Of a DNA stretch of 64,000 bases, positions 1,521-58,132 are shown piece after piece (position 1 is the stretch's first letter; every line of letters begins with the position of its first letter). The notes under the pieces are model-generated. The model saw only the letters and a program-made list of their open reading frames with translations. It had not been told where the DNA came from and did not search any database. The position numbers were made by a program, and so were the translations under genes. Source of the DNA: Octopus bimaculoides (Eukaryota); the NCBI RefSeq assembly GCF_001194135.2, contig NC_068999.1, positions 50,991,456-51,055,455 on the forward strand, in the 5' to 3' direction.

Positions 1521-2555
1521 GAAAGGAGAACTGATTTATGACGAAGAGGAATTAGTACCGTACTAATTTCTATGAGAAATATATTGAAACATGTTCAGAG
1601 CGTATACACTTATTCTTAGTTTATTTTGTATTCATGGTGCTCTGTTATCTGGAAGAGTCCACCTGCAGAATAAATAAAAACATAAAATACTGATGTTTCT
1701 GTCAAAATTAGTTACCTTTGTGTAAACAATGTTTAACCAAAATCTGACATCTGTGTAAAGGCTATGTTAGGGAAATTTCAGTCTCATTATTTTTGTGAAA
1801 ATCATTTTAACAAATAAGAGAATATATCCAAAGATGAGCCTTGGCTCAAACAAACACATAGGCATGCACACACTGAGGCAATACCATTTGCTGGACTGGT
1901 CAATAGAATTCTGAATAAAATTACGAAGTAAATGCAAGCTTGAATGACTGTCCAGGAGGCTGAAGTTATAAAGGAAAATGACTTGACGTGGCGTTGAACG
2001 CACTCAGATCGTCATTGCAAATCGAGTTAACGCTTAAGTAAATATCAATAGTGTCGTGTCTAAAATCATTTTAATAGTGAATTTGAAAGCGACTGGAGAG
2101 GAAAGAGGACGAAAATGGGGAGCGGAGATGTGTATATATAAAATGTAAGATTGAGACAAGTGAACACTAGTGTATATATCGACACCGGGCAAATGAATGA
2201 TACACTAAGACTAATATTAATATTACTAGGTGTCGTAATTGATAACCACTACAGTTTGATGTAGTATTAGAGTAAAAGACTATAAGCTTTGTTGTTGATT
2301 GAATCAATGCCAGTCAGAGATAATGCGGTTTCAGCTAATGTCTTTCTCGATTTCCTCTCATTCCGGTTCATTTCTGGCTCATCCAATTGACGTGTCTGGT
2401 GTCTTAGTGAAGGATTTATCCATTGCAATTAAATGTGAAGAAGAGGGGAAACAACATATACCTATTTGTCCATTTATCTATCTATCTAATTATCTATATA
2501 TCTATCTTCTTCCCTTTTCTCTCGCTCTCCTTCTCTGACTCTGTCGTTCTCTCTC

Positions 2556-2597
<42 letters not shown>

Positions 2598-2803
2598 TAT
2601 ATATGTGTATTCATCTGTGTGTATCTCTGTGTCTATCTATGTGTATGTAGGGTTATATGCACTAATATACATGCACATCATTACATAAGCTCATATGCCG
2701 GCGTTAATACACACACAAACACAATTTATGCCTATTGACACACATACACTCACACACACACAAATAGAAACACGAACACACAAACACATATGCATATATA
2801 CAG

Positions 2804-2920
2804 GACAGGCTTCTTCCAGTTTCCATCTACTACTAAATCCACTCACAACGTTTTGGTGGGCCCGAGGCTATAATTAATGATACTTGCCCAAGTTGACATA
2901 GTGGAACTGAACCTGGAACT
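2804..2920 (-). mobile_element. SINE-A (tRNA-derived, octopus OK/OR-like) 5' fragment
   Basis: Reverse complement matches the head of the copy at 56568 (ggcttc..cagtttcc.tctac..aaatccactcacaa....tggt.ggcc.gaggcta...acttgcccaag). Confidence 0.85.
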
Positions 2921-2951
2921 ATACATACATACATACATATACATACACGTG

Positions 2952-3510
2952 CACAGGGTGCGTAAGGTATTTGAGGACACTTTTTCGGGTAATTGCTGCA
3001 TTTTTTCATTTTTTGCTAACTGTATAATCTTTGTTTCAGAAAATAATAATAGCAGACTCTCAGCTTTCTCCAGAAATGAAGAGGCATGCTGTTATTATGG
3101 TTATAAATGCTGAGCATAGCGATTTAGAAATATCTCAATTGTTTAAGTTGCCAAATCTTTCGTCTTCAAAGTTTGTAAGGAGATAGAGACTGAAGATGGA
3201 AACGTATCGCCGTATCAGAGTATAAAAAGCATTCTAAACGTTCTGAAATCATCAGAATTTATCCAACAAGTTCAACAGACCATTGATTAAAATCCCAGAG
3301 AGTCCATGAGGTAAATTGCAAAAGAGAACTCCATGTGTCAGAAGGAACAATCAGAAATGTTGTCCCCAAAGACATCAGATATAAGTCTTATGTAATGAGG
3401 AAAGGTTTATTTGTCAGAAAAAGCCAAAGAAAATCACTGCATCAGAATTAAATGGCTCTTCAACAAACTGAAAAATCCAGCAGAAGAAGATTTGATTTGG
3501 CTTTTCTCAA
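2952..3510 (+). mobile_element. Decayed Tc1/mariner (maT/DD37D-like) transposon, left end plus transposase N-terminus
   Basis: Begins CAGGGTG (TIR-like). From ATG 3076, allowing frameshifts and stops: MKRHAVIMVINAEHSDLEISQLF / FVFKVCKEIETEDGNVSP / EFIQQVQQTID*NPRESMR*IAKE / LHVSEGTIRNVVPKDIRYKSYVMRKG / EKAKENHCIRIKWLFNKLKNPAEEDLIWLFS. This is a paired-like HTH region followed by the xxFSDE start of the catalytic domain. Confidence 0.8.
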
Positions 3511-4887
3511 GAAGCTTCCGCTTGCCAAATTTATTCACAAAGCATTTGCTGTCATAGTTATGTAATAGAAAGCATTTACCCTCAATTTTGCATATTGGGA
3601 CAAAAGCTGAGAACATGTGGAAGGACAATTATTGCCTCATTTATAAAAAAAAAACATGCATATACTTAAAATTAGCAGGTCTGCCAGATGCATACAGTTG
3701 TTTAACCTCTTGACACCTTTAGGATTACGGCTTTTTCGTCACATTCTTCATGTAGTAATATTCTCAGTGTGGAATAAATAACGTTTCTATATTTCCATTA
3801 ATATTCAAAAGTTCCACGGTCTGGGCGTAGATATGGTTGTATAAAAAGTGATGCACGAGATGGGTCAATGGTAAAAGCAAGAGCGAAAAAATGATTTTCT
3901 GGTTTATTACAGCATTTGCATATGTAGGTAAAAGTGGTATGGAAAGTCATCCACACAACACCAGGAAGAAAACCGTTGAACGTGTTCCTTATTAGTCTTG
4001 TGTGTTTTTTTTTTAATTTAGCTTTAATTAAATTTGTGCTTCAACATTGATTTCTTGTTTTCTATAGCTGGCTTTTAGTGGAAAAGGATTTCACACAAAA
4101 AAATCATGGACCAAGTAGTTGTGCATCGCTGATCTAAAGTACATCGCCTTATGAGAAATTTCAGTAGGTCACTTCACTTTTTTCAATGAAAATGTTTTGC
4201 TTTTATATACACCGGGAATTTTTAAATATAATAATACACAAGGCATACAATTTCATATTAGTTTATTGCATATATGAGTTTATGCATTGTAGTGTAACAA
4301 TTATGGTATATGAAACAGAAAATATTGAATTTCGTATAGCTTAGTGCAGTGAAAAATATTTATTGAATGGCCTTTATCTTAATAATACCTAAGCCACGAA
4401 CAAATTCTGGAGGAGTATAGAGTAGTAAAGATGAATTTTATTGTAAGTTCTTGTTATTCAAGCTAGGCTCAGCGCCGTTTCAATAGCCTTGTGATCAAAG
4501 CAGATAAAGCTGCATATATTTTTTAATTATATCATCCTGAATGCATTCGTATATATTTCCACGACAGGTTTAACGAAGAATAATTCGGTGCTATTTCTAT
4601 CATGTCACTCATATGTAAATATAAAAGAGAAACAAAACTGACTACTTATCAGGGATAGTTCTGATTAAGTTGATTAAGTTCTGATGAAATGAAATTATCT
4701 AAATGGTTCGATAGTTTGTGAAAGGTTGTGGAAGGACCCTGGCCACACCCATGAGATCAAAAAGGAACTGACGAATTTCAATAAAATATAGAAACTGTGT
4801 GAAGTGGAGGCAATTGACAATCAGCAGTTGACAACGTTCATCGTTCGCATTCGATTACTGTGTTAGTTTAATATCGTACTTACATTA

Positions 4888-5090
4888 AGGCGGAGAGCTG
4901 GCAGAAACGTTAGCACGCTGAGCGGTATTTCGTCTGTCTTTCGATCTGAGTTCAAATTCCGCCGAGGTCGACTTTGCCTGTCATCCTTTCGGGGTCGATC
5001 AATTAAATACCACTTGCGTACAGGGGTCGATCTAATCTCACTGGCCCCCTGCCCAAAATTTTCGGGCCTTGTGCCTAGAGTAGAAGAGAA
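4888..5090 (+). mobile_element. SINE-B (tRNA-derived), near full length
   Basis: ggcggagagctggcagaaacgttagcacg (A-box-like), gagttcaaattccgccgagg (B-box GTTCAAATT), then gtcgactttgcc.tcatcctttcggggtcgat. The same sequence recurs at least 6 times in the window. Confidence 0.85.
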
Positions 5091-8000
5091 TATCGTACCT
5101 ATGTTTGATGTAGTACAGAACACGTTCTGTGTGAACATATCAACTCTGCAAAAGGTTATTCTAGATAACCATATCTAGATATTGTGCTGGGTACGCCCCA
5201 ATGTCGTCATAACATTATTAGCAACGAGATATTCGAAATCCCGGAGACATTACATGAAAGGACGATGAAATTTTACAGAACTCTACATAGCATACTACAT
5301 GAATTATTTGTTATATGTTTTCAATGAAACTATATTACGATGACTACCATTCCTCATATCCGTGTGTTTTGGTTGAAATCACCCGAAAATATCCTTGTAT
5401 TTTTTGTATTTGTAAAAAAAAAATACTTAACATTTACAACGATGCCGAAATTTGATTATTGGAATACGTTAACATGTCTTTATCCAGTGCAAAAATGATT
5501 TTACAAAACAAGGTAGAAAACAATTGAATACTGGAATAATGTTGTAAATGTTTTCCTAATGTTACCAATAAATTTTGAGTGTTGTGTATATCGTAAAACA
5601 ACTACTGAATGTAAATATGATATAGTTACTTTTTCATGATGAAATTCTCAGTGCATAGATATTATTGCTTCTGTCATAATAGAAGCAATCTCAAATTTTG
5701 TCATAACTTCAACTAGAACTTTCACAAAGTTTAGCATTAAAATATAATCGAAAACAGCAAAACGATATGTAAGAAATGGAGAAGAGAAAAAATATATTAT
5801 CGCTAGGGACAGAAAAAATGGCAAATCTGTAATTGACAAACAAAGATGAAAATGTTTAAAATGGAGTAACATATTGAATAGTTTCCTTTTATTTCTTTCT
5901 TTCATATATTTACTTTCTTTTTAATTTTCTTTTTCTTTTTTCATCACACTGAATGTCGGAAAATAATTTTACATTAACATTCAAAGCCTTTGAAATGAAC
6001 ATTTAATCATTTATTTTCTTTGTTAATGGAAACACATTACAGCAACTGAAGTAGTAGTTTTACGTAAATACTTGAAGCAAAATAATTTTCAATGGTATAA
6101 AAATGGAGCAAAATTTCTTAATCGCCAACGTGATTCACTCCAATTATCATGTCAAAGATTCAATAACCAAAGCTCACATACATATCTAGCATTAACATTC
6201 ATTAGCATTAACGAGTTAGCACACACACACGCACCCACACACATATAATATACATTTAGATATACATATCCTATCGTACGCATACTCAGGCCTATAAATC
6301 GTAACTCACATCCACGCAAACGCTGAAACAAGGGGCAAATATCGTTGTGTGGTTTCCCATTAACAACGTTAGTGTTAAGTAGCGTCTTGGTCATGTATAT
6401 TGAACTGGAGATTTAAGGCGATGTTTAAAACTTCCGAAGTGATATGGGTGTATATTGTAACTCTCCGTGGTTGGTAGCTATTATCTGGCAGCAACTGGAC
6501 GACAGCGATATATAGCTACCATCAATAAAATTTGCTATATTGTAAGTTTTAGAGTTTGTATTCAACATAATGGTGAAACAATGGCATTCCATTCGTCTAC
6601 TCAAAAAGTCACAGGGAAACTGCGAAGTATAGACGCAAATTGTTATCTATTGACTTATTCATAAACAAATAATAATGCATCTGCAAAGAAATACGCAGAC
6701 GTATCTATTTACTGGCAGGAAAAATACTAAAATGAAGAGAAATAATGGAATTCGTTAAGATAATTATCGACCACTGATGTTTGAAATAAAACTTTAAACA
6801 AGTGAGTGTTACGTAAGCTATACATAGTCAACTGAGTTGTCGCTCCTGCCAAATCTCCGGCGGACAGGCACGGACACAAACACGTGTACAAACACGTATA
6901 TATGCATCTGATAGTATTGATTAAAACTATTTGATTCAACTCTATGATATATAACCCAGACGAGCATACATAACATACAGCATTACAGAGACTAAATACA
7001 TTAAAATACTATTCCTGTAAAATATGGAAGATACAACGTGCAATAAGTCAGACACTAGTCTATTGGGGACCTACAATAATGTTTACTTTTGTCTCACCGT
7101 GAACAATATTTGTCCCTCTCACTTTCTGTAACTTTTTTAGTTCTAGTTCTCTTGGAACACACACACACACACACACACACACANNNNNNNNNNNNNNNNN
7201 NNNNNNNNNNNNNNNNNNNNNNNNNNNNNNNNNNNNNNNNNNNNNNNNNNNNNNNNNNNNNNNNNNNNNNNNNNNNNNNNNNNNNNNNNNNNNNNNNNNN
7301 NNNNNNNNNNNNNNNNNNNNNNNNNNNNNNNNNNNNNNNNNNNNNNNNNNNNNNNNNNNNNNNNNNNNNNNTATATATATATATATATGCGTGAGTGCGT
7401 CCGTACGTGCGCGCGTATGTGTGTCTGTGTGTGCATGCATGTGAGGTAATATTCAAAATGGAGTGGTATACCGACACCCGCATGTGGCACGCTTGAACAA
7501 TTGCAAAGATGCCTTCGCGTGAAACTGGGTTGCCTTGTTAATCCACGTGGTATCACGGCATCGACTTCACTATGGCACGTTGTTATACATCGTTGGTCAC
7601 AATGCATTTAGCATCATTTTAGCTCTCGATCCGGATAGCTAGGCGAGCAGGCCAACATTCCCACTGGTCAGAAGGCTGGTCCATAAAAGGTTTAGGAATT
7701 TACTTACTGAGTGACATGAAGTATTTTGCTCAAGAACACTACGGAGCTGATATGAGAGTCTAAGTCACGATCACATGACTATGAGCGAAACACTACTAGC
7801 CACCAGGCGACGAGCCTTAATATATANNNNNNNNNNATATATATATACGTGTACATCGGTGCATGTTTTGTGTGTCTGTATGTGCCTATGTATTTACGTG
7901 CTTGTATGCGAGAGTGTGTGTGTGTTTGTGTGTGTATGCGTGTGATCATGTGCGTGTGTGCGCGCACGTACACAGGTGCATGCCAATGTGTGTAAATGTA

Positions 8001-12009: not shown

Positions 12010-12566
12010 GTTCTATTTGAATTTAACATACTGTTCATTTTCTACAATTTTCTTCCATCTATCTGGTAGAGTTGCAAGGGCCCTCTGTCAAAATTCACTT
12101 GTCTGTGACGAAAAATACACTTCCAGTACTGTTATGACTTCATCTACACAATTCATATTTTTCTGTCCAAATGATTTTGAAGACTGCAGAATAAATGATA
12201 ATCAGATGGCGCTATATCCGCCGATTATATGGTGGGTGCAGCATAACTTCCTAGTCAAACAGCCTTTGGAATGTCATCCTCGCTGTATATGACCGACCAT
12301 AATCCTGATAGAAGAACACCTTTCGTCTTGAAACCAAAGATGGTCGTTCTTCTTCAAGCGCAGATTTAAGCCACTCAAGCTGCTCCTTTGTTATCGTTTC
12401 GTTTGGGATTAAAAGTTGAAAGTGGATTAAACCAGCAAACAGATAACACCTTACGTGGGTGAAGACTTTCTTTAGCGTAGAGTGCCGTGTTTCGCCTTTC
12501 CCTACCCACTGTCATCGGCGCTTGACATTTTTTATAGAGAACGAGTTTCTCGTCACCAGTCACTAT
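12010..12566 (-). mobile_element. Mariner (DD34D) transposase pseudogene, catalytic domain to C-terminus
   Basis: Minus strand, with frameshifts: DRIVTGDEKLVLYK / ESLHPRKVLSV / IHFQLLIPNETITKE / QLEWLKSALEEERPSLVSRRKVFFYQDYGRSYTAR / EVMLHPPY / DIAPSDYHLFCSLQNHLD / ALATLPDRWKKIVENEQY. These correspond to the canonical mariner motifs TGDEKW, HQDNARPH and HPPYSPDLAPSDY. Confidence 0.92.
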
Positions 12567-12676
12567 TCTATCGATTTCTCTTGCCGAACCGCTAGGTTAC
12601 GGGGACGTAAACACACCAGCATCGGTGGTCAAGTGATGTTGGGGGGGGGGGGACAAATACACACACACACACTGTC

Positions 12677-12724
<48 letters not shown>

Positions 12725-12876
12725 GACAGGCTTCTTTCAATTTCCATCTACCAAATCCACTCACGAGGCTTCAGTCGGCCCGAGGCTATTGCAGAAGACA
12801 CTTGCCCAAGGTACCACGCAGCGGCACTGAACCTTGAATCATGTGGTTTGTAAGCAAGCTACTTACCACACGGCTA
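12558..12876 (-). mobile_element. SINE-A, lacking its 3' tail, with internal (TA)n/(TG)n tract
   Basis: Colinear with the 56568-57022 copy from the head through 'cggttcggcaa.aga..cgatagaata', then abuts the mariner sequence. Confidence 0.9.
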
Positions 12877-12909
12877 TGTCTGTTTACAATATCTACAACA
12901 AGGTCATAA

Positions 12910-13065
12910 CCTTCAGGTTTCGCCGAGTTTGAATTTGCTTTTCATCCTATCGGAGTCGATAAAATAAGTACCATTTGAACAGTGTAGTGGAGGTAATTCC
13001 CTTTCTCCCACCTCCGAAACTGATCACCTGGTACCAAAATTTAAAACTAATATATTACGGAATTC
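12910..13065 (+). mobile_element. SINE-B, degraded 3' part
   Basis: tttcgccgag.ttgaatttgcttttcatcctatcggagtcgataaaataagtacca matches the SINE-B core. Confidence 0.65.
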
Positions 13066-50144: not shown

Positions 50145-50303
50145 GCAGGAGCGGGTGTGTGGTGAGAAGCTTGCTTCCCAACCATATGGTTCAGCTTCAG
50201 TCCCATTTTTTGTCACCTTGGTGAGGTTCCTTCTACTAGAGCCTCAGATTAGCCAAAGCCTTGTGAGTGTATTTGGTAGACGGAAACTTAAAGAAGCCAG
50301 TCG
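50145..50303 (+). mobile_element. SINE-A 5' half, diverged
   Basis: gcaggagcgggtgtgtggtgagaagcttgcttcccaaccatatgg..ttcagtccc...ccaaagccttgtgagtgtatttggtagacggaaact.aaagaagcc. Confidence 0.85.
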
Positions 50304-50443
50304 ATTATGTACATAAAGTAAAAACTATTTGCCAACATAATGTGACAGTCCTAGACGGGACGAATAATACTGTTGTTTAGCCCCAGAAAACGTGGTTTCC
50401 AGCTGGATATACGACACAATATATGCGTCTTTATATTTTCGAA

Positions 50444-50690
50444 TATATGAGGGAGTTCAGTACCCACATCCAGCACAAAGCAACATCTGTGGTGCGGTTT
50501 CTGGGTTATTGCTCTTTCTCAGCACAGAGAATTGGCTCGGCTAGACGGCGCTGCTGAAGACCCGTTTGAAAATATAAGGACGCAGATATTGTGTCGTATA
50601 GCCAGCTGGAACGACGTACGTTTCTTGGGGCTAAAGAACAGTAATATTCGTCCTATCGAGGACTGCCGCATTATGAGTAGGTATGTGTGG
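50444..50690 (+). mobile_element. Probable mariner left end and N-terminus (alternatively a 153-158 nt exon)
   Basis: TATGAGGG TIR-like start, GCTAGACGGCGCTG leader, and VRFLGLKN..RPIE...IMSR resembling mariner VIRFLWAKNxxPxEIHR...VMSR. The open frame is also bounded by ctctttctcAG and AG|GTATGT. Confidence 0.45.
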
Positions 50691-55300: not shown

Positions 55301-56437
55301 TACATACATACATACATACATACATACATACATACATACATGCTTACATACACACATACATAAATACGTAAATGCACAAATATACACACTTGTATTAAGA
55401 CCGAAGAGTTACAAGAAAAAAATGGATAAATCAGATACCGAAGTAAAAGCAACAACGAATAACAGCAGAAGACGTCGCTTTGTTTTGATCATAACATATT
55501 TTTCCAGGCATAAGAATTAAACTGCTAATATCGCTCACTAATTGAAATAACGATGTTTCTGTGTGATGCACGCTACTATGTTATTCCTAACTCTCGATGG
55601 ATAATTTCATTCTATTTCGATTACATTATTAATATTATTATCAGTGATAGTATTATTATTGCTGCTGTTGTTGTTGTTGTTATTATTGCTTTTGACTTCA
55701 TTTATTTCTAATTATTGTTGTTGTTGTTATCATTATGCCAGAGTTAATGTTATTAAGGTGTTACTGCCCTGTTTGTACTGCTATGCATAATCATTAAATT
55801 ATATTTACTTTGCCCGTTGAAAATGAAAAGAAATTATTTTACACTATATTATGTCCTTTTTTATTGTTTCTTCTTTGTTTTCTTTCTTTTTCGTTTGGAT
55901 TCGTCTTAATTTGTAAACATTACGCCCTAACAGCCGGCCAGTAAATTATAGTTCCTAAATATCACAAATTTTATTTTTCTATTTGTCTCTTAAATTTCAT
56001 ATTTCATTTCTATGCCTGTTCAGTTGCTGGTGATGTTGTCGTTGATGTTGTCATAGTTGTTGCTTTCCTTCGTGTCATCATTTTTGCATCAACAACAAAA
56101 GAAGCAAACAGATACTTTGATATTTGCGTGTAAATCCGAATAATACTCTGCATTGAAATCCCAGTCATGGCAGTCAGATTGCCATATCGACTGCATAAAT
56201 AAGAAGCTTCAGTGTGTGAAAATATTTTCAGATACATCTCCAATACAGATAAAAAGGCGACTATAGGCGAAACACATCATAGTTTCTTATTATTGATAGT
56301 AATATTTTAATATTATATTACATTATATTATATTATAACGTGGATAGGTCGTAAGGAAACTGGGGAAATGCTTGATGGTTCTAAGTTCAAATTCAGCCAA
56401 GGTCGGCTTTACCTGTCATCATTTCGGGATCGATATC

Positions 56438-56557
56438 GCTTACGGTCATATCACGTTGAGAGCACCGGTTCTCGTCCGATCACCGAAGTTAAGCAAGGTC
56501 GAGCCTAGTGAGTACTCAGATGGGTGACCGCTTGGGAAACCTAGGTGCTGTAAGCGT
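56438..56557 (+). rRNA. RNA5S: 5S rRNA, full-length dispersed copy (possibly a retropseudogene)
   Basis: GCTTACGGTCATATCACGTTGAGAGCACCGGTTCTCGTCCGATCACCGAAGTTAAGCAAGGTCGAGCCTAGTGAGTACTCAGATGGGTGACCGCTTGGGAAACCTAGGTGCTGTAAGC. Terminal helix GCTTAC/GTAAGC is perfect, helix arms GCCTAG/CTAGGT pair, and box A (AGTTAAGC) and box C (GATGGGTGACCG) are present. Length is ~118-120 nt. No oligo-T terminator follows. Confidence 0.95.
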
Positions 56558-56567
56558 CACACCCCCA

Positions 56568-56777
56568 GGCGTAGGAGTGGCTGTGTGGTAAGTAGTCTGC
56601 TTACGAACCACATGGTTCCGGGTTCAGTCCCACTGCGTGGCACCTTCGTCAAGTGTCTTCTACTATAGCCTCGGGCTGACCAAAGCATTGTGAGTGGATT
56701 TGGTAGACGGAAACTGAAAGCTGCCCACCGTATATATATATATATATATATATNNNNNNNNNNNNNNNNNNNNNNNN

Positions 56778-56817
<40 letters not shown>

Positions 56818-57022
56818 TCCCCTCATCCCCAACATCGCCTGACAACCGATGGTGGTGTGTTCACGTAACTTAGCGGTTCGGCAAAAGAGACCGGTAGAAT
56901 AAATAAGTACTAGGCTTACGAAGAATAAGTCCAGGGGTTGATTTGCTCGACTAAAGGCGATGCTCCAGCATGGCCACAGTCAAATGACTGAAACAAGTAA
57001 AAGAGTAAAAGTGTAAAAGAGT
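56568..57022 (+). mobile_element. SINE-A, full length, with internal (TA)n-(TG)n tract and (GTAAAAGA)n-like tail
   Basis: tRNA-like head ggcgtaggagtggctgtgtggtaag...ggttccgggttcagtccc. Body is shared with the copies at 2804, 12558, 50145 and 61862. Tail gactgaaacaagtaaaagagtaaaagtgtaaaagagt. Confidence 0.92.
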
Positions 57023-58132
57023 AAAGTAAGTTCTAGTAGTGCGCTGAGGGTGGATGTCAACTTATGTATATCTAGATATATAAAAACATGCGCGCGCACA
57101 CACACGCTCACACTCACACTCAGAAACACGTTCACTACATTCTGTTGCCTGGGACATATCTCTGAAAATCATCAGTGTCACTTTATAGTAAATCTTATAT
57201 TAAAATATTAAAATATACAATGCTGCGTCTGTGGCGTGATATAAGCTCACGACCTTTGGTTCCACAGACTGAAAATTTTGTGCGAATGAGCCAGATAAAT
57301 CTGACATTGATAAACACACAGGTAATAATATCTGAGAAGTAATGTTTAGATAGCAGTGATGTTATTGAAAGTCTATTAAATCAAAGCGATAATTGCCATG
57401 ATATTAGCAGCGTGTACACATGAGTAGGTAAGATGACTATTTAGAGGAATATATCCGGAGATATAGAGAGCGAGAGAGAGAGAGACAGAAAGAGACAGAG
57501 ACGGACAGAGACAGAAAACGAAAGAGACATAAGAAAGGGGAAAAATTGCAAGGGAGGAATGAAGAATGGGAAAGAGAGAATAAGGGATGAAGGAGAGAGT
57601 GAGTGAAAGAAAGAAGACGATAGTTTAATTGAACAATTTCACATTCTCACTGATGGAAATTTCCACTTTAATGAAATTTAATTAAAATATAATTATCGTT
57701 ATTGTAGCGGAATTTATAGATTGCGGATATTAGTCGCTATGTTTATATCCTTTTATATCCTTCTAATAAATTAAGGCTTTACCATTTGATGGTATCTCCT
57801 CCCTCTTTCTCTCATACTCTGATTCTATGTCTATTTCTTTGTTCATATTCTCTCTTCAGACTTCTCCTGCATTCTATTTCTCATCCATTCTTCCTATACC
57901 TACACCCATCCACACGCCATTATTTCATATCTGTATTCCTCGCCAATTAATAATAAGGTAGATCATTTATTAATATGGGAAAATATTGCAAATGGCGTGG
58001 GCTATGAGCGTGATCAACGATATGTATAATTTGTGGTGTCGATAAACTTATACGATAATACGTATGTCATAGACCACTATGTATGTATGTATGTATGTAT
58101 GTATATATGTACGTAAGTATGTATGCATGTAT

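What the first reader, a model, noticed from the sequence alone, without database searches (positions are those of the whole stretch)
56345..57065. Full-length 5S rRNA fused head-to-tail to a full-length tRNA-SINE and inserted as one unit inside another SINE
Seen: the order is SINE-B 5' part, complete 5S rRNA starting at nt 1, a ~10-12 nt linker (gtcacaccccca), complete SINE-A with tail, then the apparent continuation of SINE-B. All parts are in the same orientation, and no SINE-B sequence lies between the 5S and SINE-A. Established: non-LTR reverse transcriptases can switch templates during target-primed reverse transcription, giving 5'-[full small RNA]-[retroelement]-3' chimeras such as U6/L1. 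5S-headed SINE3 families also exist in several animals. Inference: this is either a one-off 5S/SINE template-switch chimera or a member of a composite 5S-headed SINE family in this lineage. I do not know of such a family being described in cephalopods, but cannot check. Two independent insertions at the same spot remain possible.
Basis: partly seen in the sequence, partly recalled or inferred. Interest (0 to 1): 0.75.

Follow-up and report, generated by a model that had tools for sequence, protein, structure and literature searches.

The report
5S-headed composite SINE copy in octopus-like genome
A complete 5S rRNA copy joined by a short linker to a complete short retroelement is one member of a low-copy family of such composite mobile elements, found in at least five related species, so it is a real but fairly ordinary kind of SINE rather than a unique accident.

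Summary
Window 56438-56556 is a full-length 5S rRNA (Rfam 105.9 bits). A 10-nt linker follows, then a full SINE-A: tRNA-like head, internal (TA)n/(TG)n holding the N gap, 3' body and (GTAAAAGA)3 tail, ending near 57023. The unit splits an older SINE-B exactly (model positions 19-124 at 56350-56435, 125-168 at 57024-57064) with no target-site duplication. Single-copy contigs from three independent runs confirm both outer junctions.

It is not a one-off. The 5S/linker/SINE-A junction occurs in roughly 50-200 diverged copies in the source organism, and in many contigs of four other organism labels (about 200-300 copies in one). Other copies start at 5S nucleotide 1 with unrelated flanks. They share the TCACAC linker and carry A at 56539, where about 60% of all 5S-like reads have C. 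The unit has no T4 terminator.

Best reading: a member of a 5S-headed composite SINE family, probably transcribed from the 5S internal promoter and mobilised through the SINE-A tail. That part is inferred; no RNA data were examined.

5S plus tRNA composite SINEs are known, a 5S-headed SINE exists in a scaphopod mollusc, and a 2026 Octopus vulgaris annotation lists four '5S' SINE families. So this is a new member of a known kind, of moderate interest.

The parts
56350..56435 (+). SINE-B, 5' part (older, diverged copy), cut off at model position 124
   Evidence: nhmmer with a profile of 5 other window copies: model 19-124, E 5.9e-12. BLAST gives 76-87% identity to copies at 4945, 29220 and 35837.
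56436..56437 (+). Two extra bases (TC) between SINE-B and 5S nucleotide 1
   Evidence: They are not in the SINE-B consensus (TCGATA|AAAT). They are not part of the 5S. Most other copies diverge from this locus exactly at 56438.
56438..56556 (+). Full-length 5S rRNA-derived head (the mature 5S probably ends at 56555)
   Evidence: Rfam RF00001, 105.9 bits, model 1-120. It differs from the majority 5S reads at 5S nucleotides 9, 23, 60, 61, 73, 80 and 102.
56557..56566 (+). Linker TCACACCCCC; TCACAC is shared by the family and the rest varies
   Evidence: 100-142 reads per run carry 5S plus [G/A]TCACAC. Variants at 56563-56566 appear in junction-spanning reads and contigs.
56567..56729 (+). SINE-A head: tRNA-like region with box A-like motif (56578 TGGCTGTGTGG) and box B-like motif (56621 GGTTCAGTCC)
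   Evidence: Other window copies at 12874, 50147, 2922 and 58874. Tens of thousands of reads. ARAGORN -ps80 gives a weak tRNA-like fold at 56565-56641.
56730..56813 (+). Internal (TA)n / assembly gap 56754-56777 / (TG)n microsatellite of SINE-A
   Evidence: The same arrangement occurs in window copy 12729-12657 and in the read consensus after 56720, AAGCCCGTCGTATATATAT...GTG.
56814..56996 (+). SINE-A 3' body
   Evidence: Contiguous with the head in copy 12874-12564. 56878-57004 is present in the 5'-truncated copy 61983-61862. Read depth is in the thousands at >=95% identity.
56997..57023 (+). SINE-A tail, about three units of GTAAAAGA
   Evidence: the repeat finder family D1. Depth falls to single copy directly after it (bin 57028-57063).
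57024..57064 (+). SINE-B, 3' continuation (model positions 125-168)
   Evidence: Local alignment score 13 against a window background of 6.4 +/- 1.2; 2 of 3358 control segments reach it. nhmmer does not detect it, so support is moderate.

Best explanation
The stretch 56438 to about 57023 is one old copy of a composite SINE family. The family unit is a complete 5S rRNA sequence, an 11-nt linker of the type (A/G)TCACAC..., and a complete SINE-A (tRNA-like head, internal microsatellite, 3' body, GTAAAAGA-repeat tail). This copy landed inside an older SINE-B and split it cleanly, with two extra bases at the 5' junction and no target-site duplication.

Proposed mechanism: the founder arose once, when a 5S sequence came to lie directly upstream of a SINE-A. 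That could have happened by reverse-transcriptase template switching from SINE-A RNA to 5S rRNA, or by chance adjacency in the genome followed by read-through. RNA polymerase III, directed by the internal control region of the 5S part, then starts at 5S nucleotide 1. It reads through the linker and the whole SINE-A, which contains no T4 terminator. The SINE-A 3' end and tail recruit the reverse transcriptase of the partner LINE, which inserts the whole unit at new sites.

Shown here: the anatomy, the multi-copy and multi-species junction, 5' ends at 5S nucleotide 1 with unrelated flanks, one base linked to the junction that differs from most 5S-like reads, and the absence of terminators. Inferred: Pol III transcription from the 5S promoter, the LINE partner, and how the founder arose.
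For: 1. Full-length 5S with all highly conserved model columns matched.

2. The junction is multi-copy. With the 58-nt junction query at >=85% identity, about 36-39 reads per run cover the linker and SINE-A head in two raw-read runs (X21, X22), with about 1.9 Gb of reads sampled per run, which I take as roughly 0.7x coverage. At least 7-8 distinct single-copy-depth contigs per run span 56533-56589 with 3-8 differences. Contig depth at the linker is 2300-7700 against about 50 for single copy in X1. 100-142 reads per run carry 5S plus TCACAC.

3. The copies are dispersed. Depth over the SINE-B flank 56424-56432 is single copy (47 and 58) and rises only from 56438. 14-16 contigs per run enter a 5S-like sequence exactly at 56438 from long, unrelated AT-rich flanks. 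Contigs such as X1 record 1 (1744 nt) hold 56438-56562 inside unique sequence. X1 record 4, X18 records 21 and 22 and X3 record 26 span from within the 5S (56450-56468) to 56591-56594.

4. Single origin. All junction-spanning reads keep A at 56539, while about 55-65% of all 5S-like reads have C. Most 5S-like reads are followed by a gene-type flank ATTCTTTTTC. The window haplotype G56460 / GG56497-8 / G56510 accounts for 20-27% of 5S-like reads, close to the 18% share of the linker class.

5. Four other organism labels carry the junction in many contigs. Depth is about 10,500 against about 50 for single copy in X18.

6. There is no TTTT on the + strand in 56438-57030.

7. 5S-headed SINEs, and 5S added in front of tRNA-derived SINE heads, are established (PMC4494074, PMC4824008, PMC4758252, PMC5804259).
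Against: - No RNA evidence was examined, so transcription from the 5S promoter is inferred only.
- Copy number in the source organism (about 50-200) is at or below the 100-copy convention for a SINE family.
- Short reads and short contigs rarely link 5S nucleotide 1, the linker and the SINE-A tail in one molecule, so the proportion of full-length family members is unknown.
- Part of the 'starts at nucleotide 1' signal may come from plain 5S retropseudogenes.
- No target-site duplication flanks this copy.
- Many contigs match only to 56562 and then diverge from this copy. I attribute that to this copy's private CCCC stretch, but some could be followed by something other than SINE-A.
- Continuity across the N gap is not shown by reads.
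Confidence: 0.8

Rival explanations
1. Recurrent but independent template-switch chimeras: the LINE reverse transcriptase copying SINE-A RNA repeatedly jumps onto abundant 5S rRNA, giving many unrelated 5S/SINE-A fusions that never propagate themselves.
For: Template switching to small RNAs is the accepted origin of such chimeras and of composite SINE heads (PMC4824008, PMC4758252). Copies end at 5S nucleotide 1, as expected when the reverse transcriptase runs to the end of a mature 5S RNA.
Against: Independent events would not share a roughly 10-nt linker starting TCACAC. They would carry the sequence of the functional 5S, but junction-linked reads all have A at 56539, where most 5S-like reads have C. 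The same junction, with the same linker, is present in five organism labels.
Confidence: 0.07
2. A one-off chimera, or two independent insertions (a 5S retropseudogene and a SINE-A) that happen to abut at this locus.
For: Only one 5S lies in the window. The exact CCCC form of the linker seems private to this copy.
Against: The junction is present in tens to hundreds of diverged copies and in other species. SINE-B is interrupted once and resumes at the next model position, as expected for a single insertion.
Confidence: 0.03
3. Assembly artefact: the N gap hides a mis-join between a locus with SINE-B 5' part, 5S and SINE-A head and another locus with SINE-A 3' part and flank.
For: No read or contig spans 56754-56777 at this locus. 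The gap lies in a microsatellite, and no long-read run was available.
Against: Both sides are colinear with the SINE-A family and in the same orientation. The SINE-B halves on the two sides fit together exactly at model positions 124 and 125, which a random mis-join would not restore. The 5S/linker/SINE-A junction itself lies left of the gap and does not depend on it.
Confidence: 0.04
4. Part of a 5S rDNA array or a variant 5S gene unit with a SINE-A in its spacer, spread by DNA-level duplication rather than retrotransposition.
For: One read class shows 5S, then a gene-type T-rich terminator, then a SINE-A head about 17 nt downstream (X23, 30 reads). So 5S genes with a neighbouring SINE-A may exist.
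Against: This locus has a single 5S and no gene-type 3' flank (ATTCTTTTTC), and its flanks are at single-copy depth. Other copies have unrelated flanks on long single-copy contigs. Junction copies differ from this one by 5-14%, unlike homogenised arrays.
Confidence: 0.04

Closest known systems
AmnSINE1-type Deu-SINEs (Nishihara, Smit and Okada 2006, as cited in PMC4824008, PMC4758252 and PMC4494074)
   Same: [quoted passage not shown] Template switching is the proposed origin.
   Different: In those families the tRNA part is partial and a Deu central domain follows. Here both the 5S and the SINE-A appear complete, joined by a short linker. No Deu domain was tested. The lineage is a different phylum.
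SINE3 (5S rRNA-derived SINEs; Kapitonov and Jurka 2003; further families in Lepidoptera, PMC10886601)
   Same: A 5S-derived head at the 5' terminus, with the internal Pol III promoter region conserved, followed by a body and a LINE-related tail.
   Different: Typical SINE3 heads are followed by a non-tRNA body. Kojima 2015 (PMC4494074) gives the distribution of SINE3 as vertebrates and insects. Here the body is an entire pre-existing SINE.
Ante, a 5S-headed SINE with CORE and V domains in the scaphopod Antalis entalis (PMC5804259)
   Same: A mollusc SINE with a 5S rRNA-derived head.
   Different: It comes from a different class of molluscs and has a different body.
'5S' SINE families in the 2026 Octopus vulgaris repeat annotation (PMC13282606, Table 1 and Table S1: 4 families, 9.83 Mb)
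   Same: An octopus SINE class named for a 5S head. It may be the same family or relatives of it.
   Different: Only an automated class label and totals are published there, with no structure or sequence. Identity with the family seen here could not be tested.
Dimeric or complex SINEs and U6/L1-type chimeric retrogenes (SINEBase definitions, PMC3531059; Buzdin et al. 2003 as cited in PMC4824008)
   Same: Two Pol III-type modules fused head to tail. The architecture is a full small RNA at the 5' end and a retroelement at the 3' end.
   Different: U6/L1-type chimeras are single events. Here the fusion has itself multiplied.

Membership tests
SINE (SINEBase working definition, PMC3531059) | Short (<1 kb), interspersed, non-tandem repeat | tested here: met
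   The unit is about 586 bp plus an unknown gap length. There is a single 5S in the window. Other copies sit on single-copy contigs with unrelated flanks.
SINE (SINEBase working definition, PMC3531059) | [quoted passage not shown] | tested here: inconclusive
   About 50-200 copies in the source organism, from read and contig depth. About 200-300 in organism D. These are depth-based estimates only.
SINE (SINEBase working definition, PMC3531059) | At least 60% identity to tRNA, 5S rRNA or 7SL RNA over at least 60 nt | tested here: met
   Full-length Rfam 5S match at 105.9 bits. It differs at 7 of 119 positions from the majority 5S reads.
SINE (SINEBase working definition, PMC3531059) | Distinct from an RNA pseudogene: extra body sequence, or substitutions shared among copies but not with the cellular gene | tested here: met
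   Shared linker and SINE-A body. A at 56539 in all junction-linked reads against C in most 5S-like reads.
SINE3 / 5S-headed SINE | The 5S-derived head forms the 5' terminus of the element | tested here: met
   14-16 contigs per run diverge from this locus exactly at 56438 (5S nucleotide 1), and more at 56439-56441. X1 record 1 holds 56438-56562 within unique sequence.
SINE3 / 5S-headed SINE | Internal Pol III control region (box A, intermediate element, box C) conserved, and the element transcribed by Pol III | tested here: inconclusive
   The conserved Rfam columns across 5S nucleotides 45-100 are matched and there is no T4 run in the unit.
SINE3 / 5S-headed SINE | 3' tail shared with a partner LINE | not tested
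   The tail (GTAAAAGA)3 is defined. No LINE with this 3' end was looked for, and no genome-wide search tool was available.
AmnSINE1-type Deu-SINE | Deu central domain downstream of a 5S plus partial tRNA head | not tested
   No Deu consensus was available. I do not file the element under this family and use it only as the closest analogue in architecture.
tRNA-derived SINE (for the SINE-A module) | Head recognisably derived from a tRNA, with box A and box B | tested here: inconclusive
   Box A-like motif at 56578 and box B-like motif at 56621. ARAGORN calls a tRNA-like fold only at -ps80. The Rfam tRNA model gives no hit at E <= 10, and ARAGORN at default settings finds none.
CORE-SINE (octopus OR1/OR2 are listed as CORE-SINEs in PMC4824008 and PMC4758252) | Conserved CORE central domain | tested here: inconclusive
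   Alignment to a MIR consensus written from memory: for the SINE-A head, 22 of 1000 shuffles reach the score; SINE-B is not significant. No database CORE consensus was available.
One-off template-switch chimeric retrogene (U6/L1 type) | Unique junction present at a single locus | tested here: not met
   The junction is present in many diverged copies and in five organism labels.
5S rDNA gene or tandem array | Tandem units with a gene-type spacer and T-rich terminator | tested here: not met
   One 5S in 64 kb. The gene-type 3' flank ATTCTTTTTCTTTTT found in 415-471 reads per run is absent here. Flanks are at single-copy depth.

The most novel reading that the evidence does not exclude
An octopod-wide SINE lineage that still carries a complete, well-folded 5S and a complete tRNA-type SINE in tandem, giving two Pol III promoters in one unit. 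It would be a living example of the intermediate stage proposed for promoter replacement in AmnSINE1-type elements. It would also be the first structurally characterised 5S-headed SINE of cephalopods, and possibly still active in some species, since copy number is higher in organism D.
Probability: 0.3. Interest if true: 0.5.

Novelty: new member of a known kind. Interest (0 to 1): 0.38.

Why it matters
It shows how new SINE families arise by bolting a second Pol III-transcribed RNA onto an existing SINE, in a lineage whose genomes are dominated by SINEs. Because the 5S and the tRNA-type module are both intact, the family could serve to test which promoter drives transcription. It could also test how head replacement proceeds.

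Copies shared or not shared among octopus species could serve as presence/absence markers.

For annotation it is a caution. A consensus containing 5S plus SINE-A will pull ordinary SINE-A copies into a '5S' class. This may explain the 9.8 Mb assigned to four '5S' families in O. vulgaris (PMC13282606), but that is my inference and was not tested.

Tried and rejected
- First BLAST of the parts against the window was swamped by microsatellite hits. I repeated it with the simple repeats trimmed.
- ARAGORN at default settings and the Rfam tRNA model do not recognise the SINE-A or SINE-B heads. Other low-scoring Rfam hits (SCARNA7, mir-3149 and similar) are microsatellite or N-gap artefacts.
Read depth, two other window copies and the profile coordinates show that this stretch is SINE-A, and that SINE-B resumes at 57024.
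- nhmmer failed to detect the SINE-B 3' part. Only a lenient alignment with an empirical background did.
- CORE-domain membership, tested against a MIR sequence written from memory, was inconclusive.
- No PacBio or Nanopore runs were served, so the gap and full-length copies could not be read directly.
- A scan of metagenome contigs for the junction found nothing.
- A full-text search for three SINE-A sequence strings found no paper. Searches for SINE3 or 5S-Deu-L2 together with cephalopod or octopus gave no description of such a family. PMC4795812 (Albertin 2015) is not held.
- In the 5' boundary test on raw reads, the top of the loose-end list was filled by a different class. I repeated the test on contigs.
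- No target-site duplication of 5 nt or more flanks the unit.
- No protein-coding ORF is evident anywhere in the window.
Full report
**Observation**

Rfam finds one family above threshold in the whole 64 kb window. It is a full-length 5S rRNA at 56438-56556 on the + strand, at 105.9 bits against a gathering score of 38, with model positions 1-120 uncut (repeated). ARAGORN finds no tRNA gene.

Reading the sequence and comparing it with the rest of the window gives this order of parts:
- SINE-B 5' part, 56350-56435
- two extra bases, TC
- 5S, 56438-56556
- linker TCACACCCCC, 56557-56566
- SINE-A head, 56567-56729
- (TA)n, the N gap at 56754-56777, then (TG)n
- SINE-A 3' body, 56814-56996
- a tail of three GTAAAAGA units, 56997 to about 57023
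- SINE-B 3' part, 57024-57064

**Where SINE-A ends and SINE-B resumes**

This needed care, because 56901-56913 inside the SINE-A body resembles SINE-B (12 of 13). Three results assign 56814-57023 to SINE-A:
- Window copy 12874-12564(-) joins the head, the microsatellite and the equivalent of 56814-56901.
- The 5'-truncated copy 61983-61862(-) covers 56878-57004 and is followed by unrelated (CT)n.
- At >=95% identity the whole of 56816-57027 attracts thousands of reads, like the head. The SINE-B 5' fragment attracts only 5-18, so the two differ in age.

A profile built from five other SINE-B copies in the window places 56350-56435 at model positions 19-124 (E 5.9e-12). nhmmer does not report a 3' half. 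A lenient local alignment of model consensus 125-174 to 57011-57080 aligns positions 125-168 to 57024-57064. Its score is 13, against 6.4 +/- 1.2 for 3358 control segments of the same window, of which two reach it. SINE-B therefore resumes at the very next model position after the break. That is what a single clean insertion predicts. No direct repeat of 5 nt or more flanks the unit.

**The assembly gap and the reality of the locus**

The gap lies between (TA)n and (TG)n. This is the normal internal microsatellite of SINE-A, seen in window copy 12729-12657 and in the read consensus after 56720. Both sides are in the same orientation and in register with the family. The two SINE-B halves fit together across the insert.

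No read or contig spans the gap at this locus, and no long-read run was served. Continuity is therefore inferred, not shown.

The outer junctions are solid. Contigs at single-copy depth (47, 14 and 58) from three runs of different samples and studies run from 56200 to 56471-56476 without a mismatch. Others run from 56995-56997 to 57250. The 5S/linker/SINE-A junction lies left of the gap and does not depend on it.

**One-off or family**

With a 58-nt query centred on the linker (56533-56590, >=85% identity), about 36-39 reads cover the linker and SINE-A head in each of two raw-read runs. About 1.9 Gb of reads was sampled per run, which I take as roughly 0.7x coverage. At least 7-8 distinct single-copy-depth contigs per run span the whole query with 3-8 differences.

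With a query that ends in the linker, 100-142 reads per run carry the 5S 3' end plus (G/A)TCACAC. By comparison, 415-471 reads run from the 5S into a gene-type flank ATTCTTTTTCTTTTTAATTT. Contig depth at the linker is 2300-7700 in X1, against about 50 for single copy. These figures put the family at about 50-200 copies.

The flank next to the 5S (56424-56432) stays at single-copy depth, so the copies do not share this locus's surroundings. Instead, 14-16 contigs per run enter a 5S-like sequence exactly at 56438 from long, unrelated AT-rich flanks. Further contigs do so at 56439-56441.

Individual contigs link the parts. X1 record 1 (identical to X3 record 25, 1744 nt) holds 56438-56562 inside unique sequence. 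X1 record 4 spans 56450-56591. X18 records 21 and 22 and X3 record 26 span from 56461-56468 to 56591-56594.

The same junction is present in many contigs of four other organism labels. Depth is about 10,500 against about 50 for single copy in X18, which implies 200-300 copies there.

**Single origin**

All junction-spanning reads keep A at 56539. About 55-65% of all 5S-like reads carry C there, a share similar to that of reads with the gene-type 3' flank.

The window haplotype (G at 56460, GG at 56497-8, G at 56510) is found in 20-27% of 5S-like reads. That is close to the 18% share of the linker class.

The shared linker and the shared base at 56539 argue for one founder that multiplied, and against many independent captures of 5S rRNA. 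This copy also has private changes: T at 56446, C at 56517, and CCCC in the linker, where most copies have A at 56563 and T at 56566, with A or T at 56565.

**Mechanism**

Copies that begin at 5S nucleotide 1 and include everything down to the SINE-A tail require a template RNA that starts at 5S +1. The SINE-A promoter cannot supply that. The 5S internal control region can.

The conserved 5S columns are intact. The unit has no run of four or more T on the + strand, and the first such run downstream is at 57276. I therefore propose three steps:
- Pol III transcription starts from the 5S promoter.
- It reads through the linker and SINE-A.
- A partner LINE reverse-transcribes the RNA through the SINE-A 3' end and tail.

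These three steps are inferred.

How the founder arose is open. Template switching from SINE-A RNA to 5S rRNA is the textbook route (PMC4824008, PMC4758252), but it does not predict a 10-nt linker. Chance adjacency in the genome followed by read-through would explain the linker. A read class showing 5S, a T-rich terminator and then a SINE-A head about 17 nt downstream (X23) shows that such neighbourhoods exist.

**Comparison with what is known**

- 5S-headed SINEs (SINE3) and the addition of 5S in front of tRNA-derived SINE heads (AmnSINE1-type Deu-SINEs) are established (PMC4494074, PMC4824008, PMC4758252).
- SINEBase treats a combination of two complete modules as a new family (PMC3531059).
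- A 5S-headed SINE is described in a scaphopod mollusc (PMC5804259).
- Kojima 2015 gave the range of SINE3 as vertebrates and insects (PMC4494074).
- For octopus I found no structural description. A 2026 repeat annotation of O. vulgaris does list a SINE class '5S' with four families and 9.83 Mb (PMC13282606, Table S1).

The kind is therefore known, and automated pipelines have probably already captured it. Still apparently undescribed are the anatomy (complete 5S, linker, complete SINE-A), the copy number and the distribution across species.

I could not confirm from tool results that the window is cephalopod. Run names are coded. The tRNA origin of SINE-A and CORE-domain membership were tested and remain inconclusive.

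**Verdict**

This is a new member of a known kind, of moderate interest.

Noticed in passing
reads laid on window 56488-56491 and 56546-56552 (runs X21-X23): A 5S-related read class leaves the 5S at these two places and runs into a perfect 28-nt palindrome, AGGTTCGTCCATCGATCGATGGACGAACCT. It has 10-36 reads per run and place, with agreement up to 1.0. It could be an inverted 5S-derived repeat or a library artefact.
   Followed up: no
reads leaving the 5S at window 56554 (run X23): 30 reads continue as TATTCTTTTTGTTTATATGCGTAGGAGTGT, which is 5S, a gene-type T-rich terminator, then a SINE-A head about 17 nt downstream. This is a second kind of 5S/SINE-A neighbourhood and could resemble the progenitor arrangement.
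   Followed up: no
window 50336-50675: Nested inverted repeat with arms of 58 nt (84% complementary) and 47 nt (91%), directly 3' of a truncated SINE-A head at 50147-50298. It looks like a foldback or MITE-like element.
   Followed up: partly
window 12564-13059: A SINE-A copy (-, 12874-12564) and a SINE-B copy (+, 12911-13059) lie head to head 37 bp apart.
   Followed up: no
window 56424-56432, contigs of run X15 (organism C): Contig depth of about 28 over the SINE-B flank next to the 5S in organism C, but 0 in organism D. This may be an orthologous copy of this very insertion in organism C, which would date it.
   Followed up: no
whole window: There are eleven N gaps, and those I looked at sit inside or next to (TA)n, (TG)n or similar microsatellites. 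No ORF of 110 aa or more exists that is not microsatellite or gap read-through. The window looks non-coding and repeat-rich.
   Followed up: partly
window 57064-57130: Just after the SINE-B 3' part comes a degenerate (TA)n-like and then (CA)n-like stretch that is complementary to the internal (TG)n and (TA)n of SINE-A, with 39-nt arms at 77%. This is probably a coincidence of simple repeats.
   Followed up: no
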